Shown here: piece after piece, positions 5,582-64,000 of the stretch
How the letters are laid out: the number at the start of each line of letters is the position of its first letter
How positions within the stretch are numbered: position 1 is the first letter of the stretch
Assembly (NCBI RefSeq): GCF_006345805.1
Contig: NC_043019.1
Location: 21,947,360-22,011,359 of the forward strand
Length of the DNA: 64,000 nucleotides
Reading direction: 5' to 3'
From: Octopus sinensis
Taxonomy: Eukaryota
Notes under the pieces: model-generated
Databases searched by the model: none
What the model was told of the DNA's origin: nothing
What the model saw: only the letters and a program-made list of their open reading frames with translations
Translations under genes and position numbers: made by a program

Positions 5582-5830
5582 ATCATCATCATCATTTAGC
5601 ATCTGCTTTCCATGCTAGCATGGGTTGGATAGTTTGACTGGGGTCTGGGAAGCCAGAAGGCTGCACCAGGCCCAGTCTGATCTGGCAATGTTTCTACGGC
5701 TGGATGCCCTTCCTAACGCCAACCACTCCGTGAGTGTAGTGGGTGCTTTTTACGTGCCACCGGCACAGGTGCCAGATGGGGCTGGCAAATGGCCACGGTC
5801 GGATGGTGCTTTTTACGTGCCATTGCAGAC
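5582..5830 (-). mobile_element. RTE-tail retroposon copy with two head modules
   Basis: Family consensus plus a duplicated GTGCTTTTTACGTGCCA module. Confidence 0.82.
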
Positions 5831-7344: not shown

Positions 7345-7850
7345 ATCATCATCATCATCATTTAACGTCCGTTTTCCATGCTAGCATGGGTTGGACGGTT
7401 TGACCGGGGTCTGGGAAGCCAGGAGGCTGCACCAGGCTCTAGTCTGATTTGGCAGTGTTTCTACAGCTGGATGCCCTTCCTAACGCCAACCACTCCATGA
7501 GTGTAGTGGGTGCTTTTTACGTGCCACCGGCACAGGTGCCAGGGGAGGCTGGCAATGGCCACATTCAGATGGTGCTTTTTTACATGCCACCAGCATGGGT
7601 ATCACAACTACAATTTCCATTTGATATTTACTTTGTTGATGTACTTGACTTAATAGGTCTTCTCAAGCACAGCAGGTCACCCTACGATCCAAAGTAAGCA
7701 CAGCAGGCCATCCTATGATCCAAGGTACTTTGGATGGGCTGGTGCTGCTATGTGAAGCTGGTGCAGGAAACAGCCATGAACTCACATTATTTGTCAGGTC
7801 TTCACAGACACAGCATATCTCCAGAGGTCTCGGTCTTTCATCATTGACTC
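7345..7850 (-). mobile_element. Longer RTE-tail retroposon (extends into UTR-like sequence)
   Basis: Family tail, two modules, and a 5' extension sharing GTCTTCTCAAGCA and TCTCGGTC...TCATTG motifs with the RTE UTR at 57.2-57.45 kb. Confidence 0.78.
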
Positions 7851-10159: not shown

Positions 10160-10560
10160 TCGATCAACATCAATGGAAATTGTAGCTGTGATACCAGTGC
10201 CGGTGGCACGTAAGAGAACCATCCGAACGTGGCCGTTGCCAGCACCGCCCCGACTGGCCTCCGTGCCGGTGGCATGTAATAAGCACCATCCGATCGTGGC
10301 CGTTGCCAGCCTCGCCTGACCTCCATGCCGGTGGCACGTAAAAAGCACCATCTGATTGTGGTCATTTGCCAGCCTCGTCTGGCACGTAAAAAGCACCCAT
10401 TACACTCTCGAAGTGGTTGGCGTTAGGAAGGGCATCCAGCCGTAGAAATACTGCCAAATCAGACTGGGCCTGGTGCAGCCTTCTGGCTTCATAGACCCCA
10501 GTTGAACCGTCCAACCCATGCTAGCATGGAAAAAGGACGCTAAATGATGATGATGATGAT
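10160..10560 (+). mobile_element. RTE-tail retroposon with three ~60-bp tandem head modules plus a partial fourth
   Basis: Modules GTGCCGGTGGCACGTAAAAAGCACCATCCGATCGTGGCCGTTGCCAGC at about 10197, 10263, 10325 and 10381; (GAT)n tail at 10545-10560. Confidence 0.85.
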
Positions 10561-12800: not shown

Positions 12801-14801
12801 GTGTGTGTGTGTGTGTGTGTATGTGTGTGTGTGCATGTGCATTCATGTGTATGTTATTTTGTATGTGTGTATGTTTATATTTATAACAGCTTTACCAAAA
12901 TAAGGAAATGTAAGGTGATACAAGAAAAAATAAAATATTTCATATAAGCCAAAATAACTTGCTTCCAATAAATTAATTATCAATGTTAATTGATTTTTCT
13001 GTAGAATAAAGCCACTGAAATATAGTGTATGTGTGTATATATATATATATATATCCCCGTACATACACATCACATATACACATGCACTGTTGCGATCTTG
13101 ACACATTTGCACGAGACGGAAAAATGATCTGTTCGATCTAAGTTATAAATAAATAAGTAAAATGAGAAATAATATCGCACAGTTCAGCTAATGTTCAAAA
13201 CTCAATTTTGATAAATGAGGTTCTATGCAATAAATTATAAGCAAATACATTTTACCTGTGGTAAAACTAATGAAGCTATGTTGAAGTAATCAATTCTTAT
13301 TTATTTCTTCCCTTCTTTTCTTTCTTTTTTTTTTCTGCTTTTCGTTTTAGCGGAGGGTGAGGTCAGAATTAGGAAATTATATGTAAAAGATAATTTATCC
13401 TGTCTCAGATATATTGTCATTAATTATACATACATGCATAAGACCACTAAAAGTAATACGATATTGGAGATATGTTTTGTCCAGGATTAAGTTACAGCTT
13501 TATCGTATATATATGAATCAAAATTGACACATTTTCCATTTGAAATTTATAATGGTAAAATGAAAGAAAAATATTGAATAATTGATTATTTGTATGATAC
13601 AGAATTAAATTGTCTAGCACAAATATATATATATATATAGATGTTATATATCTATATCTCTGTCATTATGTAGATGCATGAGTAAAATACACACCTGAGT
13701 ATGAGAACAGATGCAAATGTATAATGTATATAAGCTGCATTTTTTCTGTAGGAATATGCAGGCATGAACATGTGTATATAGAAAACCGTGCACATGTGTG
13801 GTGTGTGTGTGTGTGTGTGTATGTGTGTGTGTGCATGTGCATTCATGTGTATGTTATTTTGTATGTGTGTATGTTTATATTTATAACAGCTTTACCAAAA
13901 TAAGGAAATGTAAGGTGATACAAGAAAAAATAAAATATTTCATATAAGCCAAAATAACTTGCTTCCAATAAATTAATTATCAATGTTAATTGATTTTTCT
14001 GTAGAATAAAGCCACTGAAATATAGTGTATGTGTGTATATATATATATATATATCCCCGTACATACACATCACATATACACATGCACTGTTGCGATCTTG
14101 ACACATTTGCACGAGACGGAAAAATGATCTGTTCGATCTAAGTTATAAATAAATAAGTAAAATGAGAAATAATATCGCACAGTTCAGCTAATGTTCAAAA
14201 CTCAAATTTTGATAAATGAGGTTCTATGCAATAAATTATAAGCAAATACATTTTACCTGTGGTAAAACTAATGAAGCTATGTTGAAGTAATCAATTCTTA
14301 TTTATTTCTTCCCTTCTTTTCTTTCTTTTTTTTTTCTGCTTTTCGTTTTAGCGGAGGGTGAGGTCAGAATTAGGAAATTATATGTAAAAGATAATTTATC
14401 CTGTCTCAGATATATTGTCATTAATTATACATACATGCATAAGACCACTAAAAGTAATACGATATTGGAGATATGTTTTGTCCAGGATTAAGTTACAGCT
14501 TTATCGTATATATATGAATCAAAATTGACACATTTTCCATTTGAAATTTATAATGGTAAAATGAAAGAAAAATATTGAATAATTGATTATTTGTATGATA
14601 CAGAATTAAATTGTCTAGCACAAATATATATATATATATAGATGTTATATATCTATATCTCTGTCATTATGTAGATGCATGAGTAAAATACACACCTGAG
14701 TATGAGAACAGATGCAAATGTATAATGTATATAAGCTGCATTTTTTCTGTAGGAATATGCAGGCATGAACATGTGTATATAGAAAACCGTGCACATGTGT
14801 G
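12801..14801. repeat. Near-perfect tandem duplication, 1,000-bp unit
   Basis: 12801-13800 is repeated at 13801-14801; the only difference noticed is one extra A (ctcaa vs ctcaaa). Identical ORFs at 12843 and 13843. Confidence 0.95.
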
Positions 14802-43785: not shown

Positions 43786-44033
43786 TCATCATCATCATCA
43801 TTTAACGTCCGCTTTCCATGCTAGCATGGGTTGGACGGTTCAACTGGGGTCTGGGGAGCCCGAAGGCTGCACCAGGCCAGTCAGATCTGGCAGTGTTTCT
43901 ACAGCTTGATGCCCTTCCTAACGCCAACCACTCCGAGAGTGTAGTGGGTGATTTTATGTGCCACCGACACAGGTGCCAGACGAGGCTGGCGAACGGCCAC
44001 GCTCGGATGGTGTTTTTTATGTGCCACCGACAC
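43786..44033 (-). mobile_element. Young RTE-tail retroposon copy
   Basis: About 5 differences in ~240 bp (by eye) from the reverse complement of 61949-62192. Confidence 0.88.
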
Positions 44034-52160: not shown

Positions 52161-52204
52161 TATAATGTAAATATATATAAAAATAAAAAAAAAGAGATCC
52201 TTAC

Positions 52205-52712
52205 CTTGCTGCAACACTTCCAGGTTGTATGTCATTGATATAAATTACTGAATCATCTTTGCCAGGATCTTTCATACCAACTACTCCAAATCCTAATCCA
52301 GTATTCTCTGGTTTGTATAATTTAATATGAACAAGGGATCTTCCTTTGGCTGCTGATTCAATGGCTTTCTGAAATTCCTGTTTGTATTCTTCGGTGATGA
52401 TAGTTCCAGTTGGGTGTGAACTATCTGGTAGTTCCAGTGTAGTATTGCATTTGAGACTGCTTATAGCTTTGTCATTAAGATTTAGAACCAAATCACCAGT
52501 TTTGGTGAAGCTGTAGCAATCATCAGGGATTGGTTGAGTCTCTAATACTTGTGTTAATTCATCAACGGAATCTAATAGATTGATAATCTGTTGAAATACA
52601 GGGCTTCCAAGCATGCAAATCATTGATGTCAGGTCATCGTTCATATTGGTGATACCTTGGGAATGAAGTTTAGATTCAATACTTCGAAGACTCTCCACCG
52701 CATGCTGGGAAT
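52205..52712 (-). CDS. MPDZ/PATJ: Internal coding exon of a PATJ/MPDZ-family multi-PDZ scaffold (L27 domain + N-terminal part of PDZ1)
   Basis: Minus-strand acceptor ttttcttctttgtttAG (AG = 52714-52713) and donor AG|GTAAGG (GT = 52204-52203). Length 508 = 2+504+2 (phase 1 in, phase 2 out). Translation (D)SQHAVESLRSIESKLHSQG...LGSPVFQQIINLLDSVDELTQ is L27-like, and GRSLVHIKLYKPENTGLGFGVVGMKDPGKDDSVIYINDIQPGSVAAR has the GLGF PDZ motif. L27 followed by PDZ is the PATJ/MPDZ architecture. Confidence 0.93.
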
Positions 52713-55112
52713 CTAAACAAAGAAGAAAATAGAACTCAGTACACAACTGAAGAAAATTCATTCAAAAATGAACTAAATACGATTCTTTTAATATTTTATA
52801 TAATAACAATAATAGTGACAGTGTAAGTCAATTACATTGATCTCAGTATTCAACTGACACTTATTTTATCGACCTCAAAAGGATGAAAGGCAAAGCTGAC
52901 CTCAGCAGCATTTGAACCCAGAATGTAAGGACAGAATGATAACAACAACAATACTTGTTCAAAATTTTGGTACAAGGCTAGTAATTTTAGGGAGAGGGGA
53001 GGTTTGTTGATAATACCATCCCCAGTGCTTAACTGGTATTCATTTTATTTACCTTTTAAAAAAAATGAAATACTAATTAGAATCTTTTGCAAAACATTAC
53101 TCAGATTCAGTGCAACCTATCAGATAGGGGAAAATGAAGAGAAGGTCAGTATTAGTAAGGTAAGTAAAAAAAAAAAAAAACAGTAATTTATAGACAAAGA
53201 TGCATGCAGAGAATACAGAACAAAACAAGATGAAAAATACAAACAGAAAGAGAGCCATAAAGGGGAAAACTATGTATAGGTGGTTCGACAAAGCAGTACT
53301 GGGAAACAGCAGAAATCATGAAATTTTTAGAGGATAAAGTATTTTGACAGTTAACATCTCACATGATTTATTCCATGCTTCAGCAATTCTGAACATGAGA
53401 AAAAAGTGTTTCCAAAAAATTTTTAAATTACATCGAAATTCAACTGTAGGGATACAAATGAATTAATAAATTATAAAATTATATTAAATAAACTAATTTT
53501 AAAATTTTACGAAAATTATAATTTTTTTATTTTGTTTTTATGCAGACTAATGAACTGTGTATACGAACTGTGGAATCAATATGGGGTGCGGTCGGGTGAA
53601 TAGAGATCGACAGTAATTGAAGAGAAATAAAATGTCTACTGCTAACTCAAATACGGAATATTAATTTATGCAAAGGGTTTGATATAGCTCAGCTGAAAGA
53701 AATGAATGGTCATTAAAGTGTAATTTATTAAGATGAATGATTAAATAATTGCAGTGGTAAGAACATTTAGATTGGATAAACTAGAATATTGTCATATGAT
53801 GGATAACTTTGGAAGTATACTTTTACCACCATGGATATTAGGAAATATGGAATATATACAATAATTACACTCTGTAATAATTTCTTTTTTGTCTTTGGTT
53901 AATTAGTGTTATTATCTATTTCTTCTATCTAGAAATCAAAGGTAATGACTATTATTCCTTTCAAATTTCACTTTTGTGACCTGGACATCAATGTTTTGAA
54001 ACTGACCTATTTTCCAATACATTTCAGACAGATTCAGTGCTGAACTGCTGAAGCAGAAATATTGTTATAGCAAATATTCTGCTCAATAGCACAGATTTGC
54101 TTGTCAGATGCTTGACCTTAACCACTTGAGCATCTCCCTCAGTAACTTACAATATGTGCATCTCTGATCATGAGCGGGAGTAGTGAGTGGGGGGCAACAT
54201 AGCCATGTATTAAGAGGGATTCTTTGGGATTTGAATAAATGTAACAAAAGCAAAATTTGAAGGAAATATTAGACATTTTTCACACTTTCTCGGAGTAAGC
54301 AAATGGGAAATAACAGTTGCTACCGAAGGAAAAATTGTATTACACAAGGTTATAATTTAACCCTTTAGAATTTAAACTGGCCATATATAGCTCAAATATT
54401 CTACTTGTTTTCTGTTAACACTGGCCAGATATGGCCTCTCACACCTACCCTGCTAAGCCATTCTAAAAATAGGCAAACACATCATTGAAAACTTGAAACC
54501 AGGCCCATGAGCCTGGCTAGGCTTTAAAAGGGCGCATTTATTTTATATTTTTATTAATATATCAAGATTGTATATGCATAAGAAGTGCTATGTTAAAAAG
54601 GAACCATTATTGATTTTGAAGAAGAGGAATACTCAGGTTAACCAAAATTAAACAGGCCTACAATTAAAGGTAATCCAGACATAAGTCATCACCTCACCTC
54701 TTTCTGTTTACTTCTTGTGTTTTAAGATTGTAGAGTATATTATTCGAGGATGACTTCACCACTGTTTCTAGTCATTCGAACACAAGCTGGAATTATTAAC
54801 ACAAAGCTTTTCATCCAGCTCTAAACTTAAATCCTACTGAAGTCAATTTTGTCATCCTTTCAGTGTTGATCCATGAAGTACCATTCTACCCTGCCATCGC
54901 CTATCTGAGTGGTAGTCTTAATCCATCACTCACTTTAATAACCCCCCTCTGGTATCCTTAGGTATCTTTAGTCCTTCTCTTCATCGGTCTCAGAGGTCCT
55001 GTAAAGAGTCATGGGTGCTGCCCTTCCTCCTGACTAAAACAAAATAAAAAGAGGGGTGGCAACAAGGCTACTGGTTGATGTTGACTGACAGCTCTCTCTC
55101 TCTCTCTCTCTC

Positions 55113-56420
55113 AATACATTTGCACTTTACTGTACATGTGCATTGATGTTGCACATCCAACAGAGCATACTACCTTCATTTCTCTCCAGTCTACACAGGC
55201 CTTCTGCATTCACAACCCATGTCACACTACCATGGAGTATAGCCATTCAATCACAAGCATCATATAGTCTACCTTTCACTCTGGGAGAGAGATCTTTTGT
55301 TGCCAACAGAGGTAATAGCTCTTTGAACTTCCTCCACCCACTGCTTATTCTAGAAACAAAAATTTCAGAGCATCCTCTACCATTGCTAATTTGGTCACCT
55401 AGGTAACAGAAACTATCTACAACCACAAGAGAGTCTCCTGAGAGAATCTAAGTCCCATGTGCTCTTAGTACTTATTGTTCCTGCACATCTGCCACATACA
55501 AAGACGACTTTATCTCGATCTACCTGTGGTTCCACTGCACCTCTTATGTGTCCATAGTTTACACTGGGTGCAGTGAATGGAATTTCTTCCCACTCCTTTC
55601 CTACATATTGAGCAGGGCCATTTACCTGATGGAAAGAGAGTTTTATCTTATTTCTTACTAACAACAACTTTGGTCGTAGCTAGGTTAACTTTAAGTACCT
55701 ACTACTACTAACGGATCCGGCGCCTTTCGTGGAAGCTTTTGCCCGCTTCTTAGGACTGACTGACCCATGCTCGACCGCTGTTGGCACGGAACCCATCTAT
55801 ACTTCGGTCTTCGAAGGTCTCGTTCGAATATTTGCTACTACCACCGAGATCTTTAAGGCCTTTTGATTCCAGGTTGTTTCCATACCTGGAAGTTCTCCAG
55901 TTCTACTAAAGATTCTGTAATAAGAACAAGGTCATCAGCATATAGCAGTTCCCACAGGCACATGGTTTTTGAATTTTTCTGTCATGGCCTGGAAAACTAT
56001 AATGAATAAGAGTGAGCTGAGAACTGAGCCCTGATGAACCCCTACCTGTACACTAAATGCATCACTGCATTCATGGTTGACTCTCACCTTACTGACAGCA
56101 CCACTGTACATGGCTTGTACAGCTCTAACAAGTCACTCCGCTACTCCTTACTTCCTCAGAGACCATCATTTAACAGAGCAGGGATCTCTGTCAAAAGCTT
56201 TCTCCATGTCAACAAAGGCTAAGTACACTGGCTTGCTTTTGGCTAAGTACTTTTCCTGCAGGTGTCTCACTAGGAAGATGGCATCTGCGGTACTCTTCCC
56301 AGGTATAAAACCAAACTGCATCTCATTCAGTTTAGTTCTAGTTCTAATCAATTTAGCTTTAACCCTCTCAGTAACTTTCACGACTTGGTCTAGCAATTTA
56401 ACACCTCTGTAATTGTTTCT
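55113..56420 (-). mobile_element. Degenerate RTE-clade LINE ORF2 (RT and C-terminus), interrupted by the 28S insert
   Basis: Minus-strand motifs NYRGVKLL, QFGFIPGKST.DAIF, AFVDMEKAFDR, GVHQGSVLS, ELLYADDLVL, GLK|VNL, FCYLGDQIS, GWRKFKELLPLL. Stops, frameshifts and an internal deletion are present. Confidence 0.92.
55696..55850 (-). pseudogene. Retroposed 28S (LSU) rRNA fragment with (TAG)n tail and 7-bp TSD
   Basis: Minus strand reads (AG)ATCTCGGTGGTAGTAGCAAATATTCGAACGAGACCTTCGAAGACCGAAGT...CATGGGTCAGTCAGTCCTAAG, recognisably the conserved LSU core AGATCTTGGTGGTAGTAGCAAATATTCAAACGAG.... Direct repeat CTTTAAG at 55689-55695 and 55851-55857. Confidence 0.92.
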
Positions 56421-56984: not shown

Positions 56985-58227
56985 TCATCATCATTTAATG
57001 TCTGCTGTCCATGCTGGCATGGGTTGGAAAGTTTGACCAAGGCTGGCAAGCTGGAAGGCTGCACCAGGCTCCAGTCTGACTTGGCATGGTTTCTACAGGT
57101 GGATGCCCTTCCGAACACCAACCATTCCAAGATTGTAATGCATGTCCTTACATGGAACCAGCATGGGTGCCATTTGCGTGACACTAGTATCTGCCGTGAC
57201 TGTGATCTTATTTGGTTTGATGGGTTTTCTTCTCAAGCACAACATAATGCCAAGTTCTCAGTCATTCATCATTGCCTCTGTGATCAACCACTTTATTCCG
57301 TGAGGCCCAATGCTCAAAGGTATTTTTTACGTGTCCATTACATGATATGAGCATCAGCCCTGACTACGATTTCACTTGGCTTCACAGGTCTTCTCAAGCA
57401 ATGCATATAACCAAAAGTCTCGGTCACTAGTCACTGCCTCTGTGAGACCCAAAGTTAAAAGATCATGTTTCACCACCTCATCCCATGTCTTCCCAGGTCC
57501 ACCATAATCACAGGTTCCCCCCAACAGTTAGAGATCAGCACTCCTTTACACAGCTGTCCCTGTCCACATGATCATATCAGCACAGTTGTCTCTCTTGCAC
57601 ACCACATCCAATACCTATTATGCCCAACTTTCTCTCAAGATGCTTACACTCTGTAGTACATGCATACATTGCACATCCAGTGATGCATAATAGCTTCATT
57701 TCTTTCAAGCCTACACATGTCCTTGGCTGTCAGCAGCCTATGTTTCACTGCCAAGTAGCACAGTTGTTTGCACACAGGCATAATACAATCTGCCTTTCAC
57801 TCTGAGGTAGAGGCCCTTTGTTACCAGCAGAGGTAGGAGTTCTCTGAACTTTGCCCAGCCTATTCTTATTCTCACAGCTATGCTCTTGGAGCATCCACCT
57901 CCTACCTCTAGCTTACTTGCCTGGCAGTTGATGGAGTCTATTTTCTGTACATTTTCAGTGTTTATTGTACCTGTGCATCTTCCACACACAAAAGCTATTT
58001 TCCTGTTAATCTTCCTCTGATATTGCCGCACCTCTATGTGTCCATAGCTTACACCAAGTACATCTTATGGATTTTCTACCTTCATCTTTTCCACAGATCA
58101 AGCAGAGCCATCTACCTGAAGGGATTTGTAATTTGTCTGCCCTCCTACTGACTAAGACTTTGGTTTTTTTTCTAGATTAACTCTAGACCTTGCTTCCGAA
58201 CCTGAGTCTTCTTCTCTAGTTCATGTA

Positions 58228-58445: not shown

Positions 58446-59861
58446 AGTGTGTGTATGTGTGTGTGTACACACACACTTAAATTCACCTAAATTCAACTAA
58501 TATAATATACAGTCCATGCAATTCCAAAGCACCTGACTGCATCTAAAATTTCATCAGGAAAAAAAAATGTCACTTGAACATGTGCAATATCCAATTATCC
58601 TTTACACTTTTTATTATCATTATTATTATTATTATTATCAACACTTTGCTCTACTCTAACACATTGGCAGCATGATTTACAGTTAGAATACATAAATACA
58701 CATTGCAGCAGTCATTAGTTTGAGCTGGAACAGCTGTGGCCAGTGTGACCATTAACTAATTCATTAACAGCAAGATTTACAGATAGCAAAGTAACAGTAG
58801 TGGTGTTGATGATGGTGGTGGTGGCAGTAGTTGTAGTAGTAGTAGTTGCAACAGCAGCAGCCATTACACAGTGCTGCCAATAGCTGTGGATGGAGAAAAA
58901 AGTTTAACTCAGTCAAAATATTTTCCATTTAATGTAGTATCATAAAATATAATATAGCAGCCATTGTACATCAGTGCTGCTAGCAACTTTGTACATTTTT
59001 TTTTATTTTGACCTTCATTGGTCAACAGTGACCATACCTTAACAAGATTTGTGTGTGTGATGAAAAATAGCCGTTGTCCATGCATTCAAGTTTCCTCTCT
59101 CCATGATACTAATATTTATACTAGTGAAAATACAATTTAGCACCAATATCAACACAAGCACTGCTTTCAGAATGAAAAGAACACAAACAGATACTACAAA
59201 TTATTTTTCTCAAACCTCCAACAGTTCTCTCAATCTACCATCCTGGATTAATACTTTTTTTTTTTACTTGCCCCAAAAGAATGATGGCTGCATAGCATTT
59301 TATTCTGCACTATAACAACACTGACAATGATAAATCATTGACAATTTAAATTACCAAGGTACCATAGCCAACCATTACACAAGTGAGTTAACAGTATTAG
59401 TGCTGATACCACCTGTGGGATGAATTGAATGGAACTTCGTAGCAAATATTTAGGAAAGGAGTTGGGTGTGATTCAAATGTTCAACTCACTTTTCTAGTTT
59501 GTATGGGTAAGATGGAATTTGTGAAGATAGATTTTCTAAGACCAGATGTCCATCCAGTCACCAACCCTCCCTTGTTTTAAGCACGTAATATTTCCCATGA
59601 CCCAACGTGTTCTCCACAGAAGACAGGAAACATTGCTTGTATGACAATGATGTTCATTTACAGCTACATGATGTCAAGACAAAGTGACACACACACACAT
59701 ATATATATACATGACAAGCTTCTTTCAGTTTCCATCTGCCAAATACATTCAACTTCACCATGAGTAGAAAACACTTGCCCAAGGTGGACTGAACTGGAGA
59801 CTACATGGTTGGGAATAGAGCTTCTTAACCACACATCCATGCATGTGCCCATATCTATCTA

Positions 59862-61909: not shown

Positions 61910-62191
61910 CCATCCAAGCATGGCCATTCGCCAGCCTCGTCTTGCACCTGTGTCGGTGGCACATAAAAAACACCATCCGAGCGTGGCTGTTCGCCAGCCT
62001 CGTCTGGCACCTGTGTCAGTGGCACATAAAATCACCCATTACACTCTCGGAGTGGTTGGCGTTAGGAAGGGCATCCAGCTGTAGAAACACTGCCAGATCT
62101 GACTGGCCTGGTGCAGCCTTCGGGCTCCCCAGACCCCAGTTGAACCGTCCAACCCATGCTAGCATGGAAAGCGGACGTTAAACGATGATGA

Positions 62192-62954: not shown

Positions 62955-63276
62955 ACCTATGGAACAAAATGTACTGTACTTACAAATAAGAACAGGCTGG
63001 CATCAAAAAATGATATCCAGCCAGGGAATGCTATCTCAAACAGTTTTGTCCAACCAATGCTAACTTGGGTGAGAAAATAAATTAATGTAAAACCACAATG
63101 AAGCCAATGACCAATACCTATGGAACAAAATGTACTGTACTTAGAAAGAAGAACAAGCTGGCATCAAAAAATGATATCCAGTCAGGGAATGCTATCTCAA
63201 ACAGTCTTGTCCAACCAATGCTAACTTGGGTGGGAAAATAAATTAATGTAAAACCACAATGAAGCCAATGACCAAT
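62955..63276. repeat. 161-bp tandem duplication
   Basis: 62955-63115 vs 63116-63276; six substitutions counted. Confidence 0.92.
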
Positions 63277-64000
63277 ATTGATTTTTTTTTTTTCTTTCCT
63301 AACCACATAATTATTGCTTTTTGATGTTCTTGCATTAAACATGTTGTCACTAACTTAGTTACATTCAATAATATATTAATATCAAGCAATATTAAATATT
63401 ATAAATACCAGTTTGAGACGGAAAAAAAAAAGAAAGTCTCATCGATGTGACATAACTCTTGTATCTATTACGTGCAAAGTCTGTTTCTCTTTTCTGTTTT
63501 AAAAATAAGTGCGTTTTGTGTGATGTTTCATACCACTTTACATTGGAAATTTTCAGAATTAATTCATTGATCAACTATTAATAGTTTAGACAGTATAGCA
63601 GTAGAGTGTTGAATTAGTAACTTTGTACACAAATGGCACTAATCATTAGCACATCAGACAAAATACTTAGTGACTTTTCTTCCAATTCATTATGTTCTGA
63701 GTTCAAATTCCACCTAGGTCAGTTGAGTACAGGGTTCAATGTAATTGACTTACCTCATTCCTCATCTGCCAAAATCAGAAAGGAATTAATGTAGTAGGTG
63801 AGGTGGGTTGGGGGTGCTCTAAATTATAGATTTGGGTTCTTTGTAGAGAAAACACAGGAGTTTTATAACAGAATATAAATTTTTGATTCTGAGTGCTGTA
63901 TTCTAGTCATAATCATCATGCATTGAACACATTTTGCAGCACGTTGATGGCACTAAAACAAAAGTCTTCCTGATAAAATGTGAGTTCTTCCATTGGATGA

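What the first reader, a model, noticed from the sequence alone, without database searches (positions are those of the whole stretch)
55689..55857. 28S rRNA retro-insertion with TSD and (TAG)n tail that ends near the expected hidden break
Seen: a 155-bp LSU rRNA segment is inserted between codons GLK|VNL of an RTE ORF2. It has a perfect 7-bp TSD (CTTAAAG on the minus strand), 2-nt AG microhomology at the 5' junction and a TTAGTAGTAGTAGGTA 3' tail. The related RTE at about 58170-58185 is uninterrupted at the homologous codons. Its differences from the canonical core include paired changes (TTCGAA...TTCGAA vs TTCAAA...TTTGAA), so the template was a functional, divergent rRNA. Known: many protostome 28S rRNAs are cleaved in the D7a region just downstream of GGTCAGTCGGTCCTAAG. 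Inference: a LINE RT primed on the free 3' end of processed 28S-alpha, leaving a DNA record of the cleavage site. It could also be a member of an undescribed 28S-derived SINE family. A non-host source (e.g. a parasite rRNA) is not excluded.
Basis: partly seen in the sequence, partly recalled or inferred. Interest (0 to 1): 0.8.

Follow-up and report, generated by a model that had tools for sequence, protein, structure and literature searches.

The report
Octopus 28S rRNA fragment retro-inserted in RTE
A 155-base copy of the octopus's own large-subunit ribosomal RNA was reverse-transcribed into an old retrotransposon, and it stops where protostome 28S rRNA is normally cut in two, which is suggestive but rests on one copy.

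Summary
Window 55696-55850 (minus strand) is a 155-nt insert. Its first 140 nt are eukaryotic LSU rRNA (cmscan E 2e-18). It is flanked by a perfect 7-bp duplication (CTTAAAG), and removing it restores the reading frame of a LINE reverse transcriptase.

The window comes from Octopus vulgaris. The rRNA part matches incirrate-octopod 28S at 135 of 142 positions, and 4 of the 7 differences are CpG transitions. It also carries the octopod-specific D7a arm. The template was therefore ordinary host 28S, not a divergent or parasite rRNA.

rRNA homology ends exactly at the last conserved base (..GGATCCGT, 28S nt 2058 of 4907) before the hypervariable D7a loop. That loop is the region where protostome 28S is split into alpha and beta. 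This fits reverse transcription starting at the 3' end of 28S-alpha, but the octopus D7a cut has not been mapped to the nucleotide.

The origin of the 15-nt TAGTAGTAGTAGGTA remains unresolved. It is absent from the three octopod loops I recovered. It is also unlike the (GAT)n tails of all 15 RTE/SINE 3' ends in this window. Cephalopod D7a loops are, however, full of fast-changing trinucleotide runs.

28S retropseudogenes, 28S/LINE-1 chimeras and SINE28 are already known in mammals. This is a tidy, moderately interesting new member of that kind.

The parts
55851..55857 (-). 5' copy of the 7-bp target-site duplication CTTAAAG. Its last two bases (AG, 55852-55851) are also the two rRNA bases that precede ATCTCGG, which gives a 2-nt microhomology.
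55711..55850 (-). 140 nt of 28S rRNA, sense strand, corresponding to nt ~1919-2058 of a 4907-nt octopod 28S. It runs from the conserved core (GGTGGTAGTAGCAAATATTC..) through GGTCAGTCGGTCCTAAG and the conserved 5' arm of expansion segment D7a, and ends at ..GGCGCCGGATCCGT.
   Evidence: cmscan; BLAST/alignment to cephalopod rDNA; 135/142 identity to L025/L030; LSU coordinates
55696..55710 (-). TAGTAGTAGTAGGTA, 15 nt of unresolved origin. It occupies the position where the hypervariable D7a loop begins. It is either the first 15 nt of the loop of the rDNA variant that was copied, or sequence added or borrowed during reverse transcription.
   Evidence: loops of other cephalopods; RTE/SINE tails are (GAT)n
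55689..55695 (-). 3' copy of the target-site duplication CTTAAAG.
55136..55688 (-). Downstream part of the host LINE copy (end of the RT domain, PHD-type finger, C-terminal region). It is decayed, with stops and frameshifts, and its own 3' end is lost below ~55120.
55858..56396 (-). Upstream part of the host LINE copy (RT domain, including the YADD motif at ~55925-55936).
56990..58185 (-). Second, ~70% identical RTE-like copy, used as the uninterrupted comparison (..ARSRVNLEKKTKVLVS.. at ~58150-58185). Its ORF ends at 57372. Its 3' UTR ends in ..TTAAATGATGATGA, and the last ~150 nt are shared with the window's SINE copies.

Best explanation
This is a one-off processed pseudogene of the host's own 28S rRNA, made by a LINE enzyme. 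A LINE endonuclease/reverse transcriptase nicked an older, resident LINE copy at ..CTTTAAG^GCC.. on the strand that served as primer. I cannot say which LINE family did this, but RTE-type elements dominate the window. 

The enzyme copied a 28S rRNA molecule starting at, or at most 15 nt inside, the hypervariable loop of expansion segment D7a. It stopped after 140-155 nt. The 5' end was joined through a 2-nt (AG) microhomology after a second nick 7 bp away, which produced the CTTAAAG duplication. 

The start point is the interval where protostome 28S is processed into alpha and beta halves. The most economical reading is therefore that the template was mature 28S-alpha and that copying began at its natural 3' end. 

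Shown: the rRNA identity and octopod origin, the duplication, the restored frame, the microhomology, and the position of the 3' boundary relative to the conserved and variable parts of D7a. 

Inferred: target-primed reverse transcription, the identity of the enzyme, that the template was 28S-alpha and not a random fragment, and the origin of the TAG run. My estimate for the TAG run is about 55% templated loop sequence, about 30% added or borrowed during reverse transcription, and the remainder other. 

Confidence that this is a retro-insertion of host 28S is about 0.85. Confidence that the template was 28S-alpha is about 0.5-0.55.
For: - LSU rRNA match, E 2e-18.
- Perfect 7-bp duplication and restored RT frame.
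- Uninterrupted paralogue and homologues.
- Window is from O. vulgaris: patj exon 169/169 identical.
- Insert is 135/142 identical to incirrate-octopod 28S. These contigs carry the H88 signature GCTATGCGTCCGCC in its proper context. Four of the 7 differences are CpG transitions.
- The octopod-specific D7a arm AAGAAGCGGGCGAAAGCTTCCACG is shared with the insert. Decapod-type sequences have ACGCGGGCGAAAGTCTTCCCG.
- In all 11 distinct cephalopod sequences, conservation ends at ..GGATCCGT. A 40-150-nt species-specific loop follows, closed by ..CGGCCGGCC..CGAAAGGGAATCGGG (folds). The insert's rRNA homology ends at exactly that base.
- That loop lies between the two markers that flank the protostome break (PMC6925239). 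It is also the distal-D7a site of the 'gap deletion' upstream of CGAAAGGG (PMC4671170). Cephalopods are reported to have the break (PMC10755191; 'protostome gap' drawn for octopus in PMC13321053). 
- The loop is 55 nt of a 4907-nt 28S. A random 3' end would fall in it about 1% of the time.
- From my own knowledge, not a tool result: non-LTR RTs start at the 3' ends of RNA templates.
Against: - There is only one copy, so the coincidence with D7a is post hoc. 
- The octopus D7a cut has not been mapped to the nucleotide. The 2026 preprint mapped only the H88 break. 
- TAGTAGTAGTAGGTA does not match the loop starts of the available octopods (CGTTTAGAAAG.., CGTATAGTTCAG.., Argonauta TGTGACAATT..). 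If it is loop sequence, the source variant is unseen. If it is not, an extra step is needed.
- RTE-type LINEs are thought to recognise their own 3' UTR, and the insert lacks the ~150-nt RTE/SINE 3' module. Trans-mobilisation of a bare rRNA fragment would therefore be unusual for them.
- No orthologous empty site or long-read support could be checked.
Confidence: 0.55

Rival explanations
1. The TAG run is a retrotransposon-type microsatellite tail. Under this reading the insert is an rRNA/LINE-tail chimera, formed by template switch or RNA ligation of 28S-alpha to a (UAG)n-ended LINE RNA piece. Alternatively it is a member of a small 28S-derived SINE-like family mobilised through that tail.
For: - RTE elements carry microsatellite 3' ends (PMC9115989). 
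- The run has 4 trinucleotide units, the same size as the (GAT)3-5 tails of the window's RTE/SINE copies.
- The run is absent from the three octopod loops retrieved.
- 28S/LINE-1 chimeras and SINE28 exist in mammals (PMC13174262, PMC4994717).
Against: - All 15 RTE/SINE 3' ends in the window end in (GAT)n preceded by a shared ~150-nt module. None ends in (TAG)n.
- The run is impure at its end (..TAG-GTA). 
- The 5' end looks like random truncation with microhomology, not a defined SINE head. 
- There is no second copy in 64 kb.
- Six-frame protein searches found no TAG-joined relative; they returned only true rDNA.
- Cephalopod D7a loops are themselves made of trinucleotide runs: (GAG)n, (GTC)n, (CAA)n, (GAC)n, (CTG)n.
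Confidence: 0.25
2. It is a retro-insertion of host 28S, but the 3' end has nothing to do with the hidden break. Reverse transcription started internally, or on a random degradation fragment, and the position in the exposed D7a loop is a coincidence or reflects general nuclease sensitivity.
For: - There is only one event. 
- Surface-exposed loops are generally nuclease-sensitive (PMC6925239).
Against: - The chance of landing in a 55-nt loop of a 4907-nt rRNA is about 1%.
- The boundary coincides to the base with the end of the conserved stem.
Confidence: 0.2
3. The rRNA was picked up while this LINE copy itself was being reverse-transcribed. The RT jumped from the LINE RNA to the rRNA and back, and re-copied 7 nt. 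Under this reading the 'duplication' is not a target-site duplication.
For: - The AG microhomology sits at the return junction. 
- The insert and the host LINE are in the same orientation. 
- The decay of the insert (5%) is not clearly lower than that of the host copy.
Against: - It needs two jumps and a precise return 7 nt back. 
- A 7-bp direct repeat at both exact boundaries is the standard signature of staggered endonuclease nicks. 
- There is no precedent that I could cite.
Confidence: 0.05
4. The rRNA comes from a non-host organism (for example a dicyemid or another parasite), or the junction is an assembly chimera.
For: None found.
Against: - 135/142 identity to incirrate-octopod 28S, including the octopod-specific D7a arm.
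- The residual differences are mostly CpG decay. 
- Both flanks continue one reading frame, with a perfect duplication, which a read-joining error would not create.
Confidence: 0.02

Closest known systems
[quoted passage not shown]
   Same: A fragment of mature 28S rRNA is reverse-transcribed by a LINE enzyme and inserted with target-site duplications. The fragments are 50-482 nt, mostly sense-oriented, and possibly derive from pre-existing rRNA fragments.
   Different: The mammalian cases are L1-driven and carry poly(A) or an L1 3' part. This one is in a mollusc whose dominant LINEs are RTE-type. It has no poly(A) and no recognisable LINE part, and its 3' boundary sits at an rRNA processing region that mammals lack.
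SINE28 (28S-derived SINE of mammals, PMC4994717)
   Same: It is 28S-derived dispersed DNA.
   Different: SINE28 derives from the 3' end of 28S, is multi-copy, and is reported to be pol III-transcribed. Here there is one copy from the middle of 28S, and no evidence of a family or a promoter.
Tailless retropseudogenes and U6/LINE-1 chimeras (Schmitz et al. 2004; Buzdin et al. 2002-2003; recalled from memory, with U6 chimeras reviewed in PMC13174262)
   Same: Abundant non-coding RNAs are copied by LINE RT without a poly(A) tail of their own. The ends of the copied piece reflect the natural ends or cleavage sites of the RNA (tRNA halves, the U6 3' end).
   Different: Those are L1-dependent. The RNA here is an rRNA half whose end would be created by the protostome-specific D7a gap processing.
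Protostome 28S hidden break / gap deletion in D7a (PMC6925239, PMC4671170)
   Same: The insert's rRNA homology ends inside the interval between the markers AGUGGAGAAGGGUUCCAUGU and CGAAAGGGAAUCGGGUUUAA, at the base of the variable distal D7a hairpin.
   Different: The break is an RNA-level event. No DNA 'fossil' of it has been described in what I read. The exact octopus cut site is unknown.

Membership tests
LINE-mediated (target-primed) retro-insertion of a cellular RNA / processed rRNA pseudogene | The sequence derives from the mature RNA, not from rDNA with spacers. | tested here: met
   Only 28S sequence is present, 5'-truncated inside the conserved core. There is no ITS/IGS, and the 3' boundary falls in an RNA-processing region.
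LINE-mediated (target-primed) retro-insertion of a cellular RNA / processed rRNA pseudogene | Target-site duplication flanking the insert. | tested here: met
   Perfect CTTAAAG at both exact boundaries.
LINE-mediated (target-primed) retro-insertion of a cellular RNA / processed rRNA pseudogene | An empty site exists. | tested here: inconclusive
   The frame is restored by removing the insert. A paralogous LINE copy and 6 homologous proteins are uninterrupted. The orthologous or allelic empty site could not be fetched.
LINE-mediated (target-primed) retro-insertion of a cellular RNA / processed rRNA pseudogene | A 3' tail of the type used by the mobilising LINE (poly(A) or its microsatellite). 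| tested here: inconclusive
   There is no poly(A). The (TAG)4GTA run is present, but RTE/SINE tails in the window are (GAT)n, and the run may be rRNA loop sequence.
28S-derived SINE family | Multiple dispersed copies with independent duplications. | tested here: not met
   There is no other copy in 64 kb, and six-frame protein searches returned none. A genome-wide census is not possible with these tools.
28S-derived SINE family | A 3' module shared with a partner LINE. | tested here: not met
   The ~150-nt RTE/SINE 3' module ending in (GAT)n is absent from the insert.
28S-derived SINE family | An internal pol III promoter or a defined 5' end. | not tested
   The 5' end shows 2-nt microhomology with the target, as in random 5' truncation. 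No promoter assay is possible.
DNA record of the protostome hidden break (template = 28S-alpha) | The 3' end of the rRNA part lies in the variable D7a loop, between the two break markers. | tested here: met
   Homology ends at ..GGATCCGT, the last conserved base before the loop in all 11 distinct cephalopod sequences. Markers are from PMC6925239.
DNA record of the protostome hidden break (template = 28S-alpha) | The 3' end coincides with the mapped 28S-alpha 3' end of the host. | not testable with these tools
   No nucleotide-level map of the octopus D7a cut was found. PMC13321053 mapped only H88.
DNA record of the protostome hidden break (template = 28S-alpha) | Recurrence: independent copies share the same 3' end. 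| not testable with these tools
   No cephalopod genome collection can be searched at the DNA level here.
Foreign (parasite) rRNA insertion | Closer to a non-host rRNA than to host rRNA. | tested here: not met
   135/142 identical to incirrate-octopod 28S, with the octopod-specific D7a arm. The window is O. vulgaris.

The most novel reading that the evidence does not exclude
Dispersed rRNA retro-copies in protostome genomes preserve the natural 3' ends of processed rRNA pieces. If so, this insert is a DNA fossil of the octopus 28S-alpha 3' end. A genome-wide census of such copies would map the D7a cut to the nucleotide without any RNA work. In incirrate octopods, copies ending at the lineage-specific H88 break (28S nt ~4101 in L025) could date when that break arose.
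Probability: 0.35. Interest if true: 0.6.

Novelty: new member of a known kind. Interest (0 to 1): 0.4.

Why it matters
By itself this is one more processed rRNA pseudogene, a class already known from mammals. Two things give it some value. First, it shows that a mollusc LINE enzyme, in a genome dominated by RTE-type elements that supposedly copy only RNAs carrying their own 3' end, has copied a bare rRNA fragment. Second, the copied piece ends to the base where the conserved D7a stem gives way to the loop in which protostome 28S is cut. If that is not a coincidence, dispersed rRNA copies are a cheap genomic read-out of rRNA processing sites. They could then be used to map and date rRNA breaks, including the recently reported octopus-specific H88 break (PMC13321053). 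That is testable by a simple genome-wide search that I could not run here.

Tried and rejected
- A whole-window Rfam scan at gathering thresholds found nothing. Only a focused E-value scan detected the fragment. \n- The second TAGTAGTAGTAG in the window (58834-58845) is in a low-complexity (GTR)n stretch, not at a LINE 3' end. \n- I first read T/L runs in antisense ORFs of cephalopod rDNA (P0004, P0005) as evidence that (TAG)n is templated. The DNA showed they are (GTC)n/(GAG)n and GTTGTAGT, so that lead was wrong. \n- I first took L008/L009 for incirrate octopods because they contain TATGCGTC. That motif lies in the spacer about 5.7 kb downstream of D7a and is a chance match. The true H88 context is in L025-L030. 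\n- Exact-pattern scans of JGI metagenomes and GTDB genomes for the octopod D7a arm and for the CCGT-TAGTAG junction gave nothing relevant.

Full report
**What is there**

On the minus strand the window reads ..AAAAGGC CTTAAAG | ATCTCGGTGGTAGTAGCAAATATTCGAACGAG ... CGAAAGGCGCCGGATCCGT | TAGTAGTAGTAGGTA | CTTAAAG TTAACCTAGC... The two CTTAAAG copies lie at 55857-55851 and 55695-55689, and the 155 nt between them lie at 55850-55696.

A whole-window Rfam scan at gathering thresholds reported nothing. A focused scan of 55500-56050 matched LSU_rRNA_eukarya at 77.4 bits, E 2e-18. The confident alignment runs from AGAUCUCGGUGGUAGUAGC through GGGUCAGUCAGUCCUAAG into expansion segment D7a.

Joining the flanks and dropping one repeat copy restores a LINE reverse-transcriptase frame..NNLESKGLK|VNLATTKVVVSKK.., followed by a Cys-rich finger. 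The reconstructed peptide hits Pfam RVT_1 (E 5e-16) and PHD. It aligns at 49-77% identity with database RT+PHD proteins, all of which read ESKGL(K/R)VNLAKTKV without interruption. The ~70%-identical second copy in the window, at ~58150-58185, does the same.

**Whose rRNA it is**

The window is Octopus vulgaris. An exon at 52201-52761(-) is 169/169 identical to the O. vulgaris patj homologue.

No eukaryotic DNA collection was available, so I recovered cephalopod rDNA indirectly. I searched six-frame translations of the insert, and then a sense-strand pseudo-ORF of 28S, against the protein collection. I then fetched the contigs that carry the spurious ORFs. This yielded 11 distinct cephalopod 28S sequences:
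- Argonauta hians (L022, NCBI).
- Two groups of true incirrate-octopod contigs (L025-L029 and L030). These carry the published incirrate H88 signature TATG/CGTC in its proper context (PMC13321053).

Over 142 nt (AG + ATCTCGG..CCGT) the insert differs from L025/L030 at 7 positions. Four are CpG-to-TpG/CpA transitions. The other three cluster at 55795-55800, GTGGAGAAGG to GTATAGATGG.

The D7a 5' arm AAGAAGCGGGCGAAAGCTTCCACG is specific to the octopod sequences and is shared with the insert. Decapod-type sequences have ACGCGGGCGAAAGTCTTCCCG, and Argonauta differs at three positions. The template was therefore ordinary host-lineage 28S. What looked divergent is cephalopod-typical sequence plus post-insertion decay. 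A parasite source is excluded for practical purposes.

**Where the copy ends**

All cephalopod sequences share the same architecture:
- CCTAAG, then a conserved 38-nt arm ending ..GGCGCCGGATCCGT.
- A species-specific loop of about 40-150 nt.
- ..CGGCCGGCC(T)..CGAAAGGGAATCGGGTTAA.

Folding pairs CCGG..CCGU with RCGG..CCGG, so the variable part is the distal hairpin. The insert's rRNA homology ends at exactly the last conserved base (55711).

In L025 the 28S is 4907 nt. That base is nt 2058, the loop is 55 nt, and the H88 break is at nt ~4101.

The loop lies between the two 20-mers that Natsidis et al. use to bracket the protostome hidden break (PMC6925239). It corresponds to the distal D7a site of the 'gap deletion' upstream of CGAAAGGG (PMC4671170). 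Cephalopods are stated to have this break (PMC10755191), and the 2026 octopus-ribosome preprint draws a 'protostome gap' alongside the new H88 break. That preprint maps only H88 by RACE (PMC13321053).

A random 3' end would fall in this loop about 1% of the time. That is the main argument that the template ended there naturally, that is, that it was 28S-alpha. It remains a single, post hoc coincidence.

**The 15 nt TAGTAGTAGTAGGTA**

This is the weak point of the original interpretation. Evidence against a LINE-type tail:
- All 15 RTE/SINE 3' ends in the window share a ~150-nt module and end in (GAT)3-5. None ends in (TAG)n.
- The only other TAG run in the window is not at a repeat end.
- The run ends impurely (..TAG-GTA).
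- Cephalopod D7a loops are themselves built of fast-evolving trinucleotide runs, (GAG)n, (GTC)n, (CAA)n, (GAC)n and (CTG)n. They vary even between samples of one octopod (L025 versus L028).

Evidence against templated loop sequence:
- The octopod loops I could retrieve begin CGTTTAGAAAG.. and CGTATAGTTCAG... Argonauta begins TGTGACAATT...
- The insert matches these only if a 4-nt gap is allowed before a shared TAG.
- Exact-pattern scans for the junction found nothing relevant.

I could not obtain O. vulgaris rDNA, so the question stays open. My estimate is about 55% templated, about 30% added or borrowed during reverse transcription, and the rest other. Under either reading the rRNA part ends 0-15 nt into the loop, so the 28S-alpha idea survives both.

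**Mechanism**

The perfect 7-bp duplication, the 2-nt AG overlap at the 5' junction (rDNA reads GGGTGC-AG-ATCTCGG) and the 5' truncation inside a conserved core are the usual marks of target-primed reverse transcription with microhomology-mediated 5' joining. The primer-strand nick would be at CTTTAAG^GCC.

RTE-type elements dominate the window and are active in Octopus (PMC9115989), so they are the likeliest enzyme source, but this is inference. Such elements are usually thought to require their own 3' UTR, which the insert lacks (from my own knowledge, not a tool result). I could not derive the nick-site preference from the old SINE copies.

A two-jump template switch during the LINE's own reverse transcription would also give a 7-nt repeat. 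It is less parsimonious, and I put it at about 5%.

**Comparison with what is known**

28S retropseudogenes, 28S/LINE-1 chimeras (18 loci, fragments of 50-482 nt, possibly from pre-existing rRNA fragments) and the 28S-derived SINE28 are documented in mammals (PMC13174262, PMC4994717). This locus is the same kind of event in a mollusc. It differs in having no poly(A) or LINE part, and in having a 3' boundary at a protostome-specific processing region.

Evidence for a SINE family is absent: one copy in 64 kb, no LINE 3' module, and a 5' end that looks randomly truncated.

**Verdict**

This is a real, cleanly delimited retro-insertion of host 28S rRNA.
- The 'divergent template' and 'non-host' ideas are wrong.
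- The '(TAG)n tail' is unproven and may be rRNA loop sequence.
- 'Ends at the hidden break' is consistent to the base with the architecture of D7a, but it needs a mapped RNA end or recurrence to count as evidence.

Interest is moderate. The follow-up that would raise it is a genome-wide census of dispersed 28S fragments and their 3' ends, including at the octopus-specific H88 break. That census is simple but could not be run here.

Noticed in passing
window 56990-57140 (-) and 14 further sites (e.g. 1554-1704, 5591-5741, 7357-7508, 10398-10548, 43797-43946, 62037-62186): The last ~150 nt of the 3' UTR of the second RTE-like copy are shared with 14 further 3' ends in the window. These include the SINE copies (some also carry 62-bp internal tandem repeats). 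The copies end in ..TAAA(T/C)GAT followed by GAT repeats, about (GAT)3-5. This is a clear LINE/SINE partnership with a (GAT)n tail.
   Followed up: partly
window 12801-14504: Two 300-nt blocks repeat at 100% identity with spacing of exactly 1000 and 1001 bp. TRF rows likewise repeat with a 1000-bp offset. A perfect ~1-kb tandem duplication with such a round period looks like an assembly or scaffolding artefact, not biology.
   Followed up: partly
window 52201-52761 (-): An exon encoding the L27/PDZ N-terminal part of the patj homologue is 169/169 aa identical to the Octopus vulgaris protein. This identifies the source genome. The rRNA insert lies ~3 kb from this exon.
   Followed up: yes
window 55795-55800 (-): The three non-CpG differences between the insert and octopod 28S are clustered within 6 nt (GTGGAGAAGG to GTATAGATGG). 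This could be a multi-nucleotide mutation, reverse-transcriptase misreading at a modified rRNA base, or an rDNA variant.
   Followed up: no
L013-L021 (Logan contigs of one cephalopod species): Nine independently assembled contigs from different sequencing runs begin at six different positions inside the D7a variable loop. This could reflect a coverage drop at the hidden-break gap, or assembly breaks at (GTC)n/(GAG)n repeats.
   Followed up: no
P0022 (NCBI 'MAG: Herbaspirillum sp.'), L031 (GTDB Thermoplasmatota MAG): The closest database relative of the host LINE's RT (68% identity) is filed under a bacterial MAG, so it is most likely animal contamination of that bin. Separately, the only exact hit to GGCGCCGGATCCGTTAGTAG in prokaryotic genomes is a chance match inside an archaeal coding region.
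   Followed up: partly
window 62955-63277: A 161-bp unit is repeated twice in tandem at 96% identity. It has not been assigned to any element.
   Followed up: no
L008/L009 and L007 (ENA long-read metagenome assemblies): Contigs of 20-27 kb flagged as circular carry complete cephalopod rDNA units. These are presumably tandem rDNA collapsed into circles. Their D7a loops are 115-150 nt long and very different from each other.
   Followed up: no
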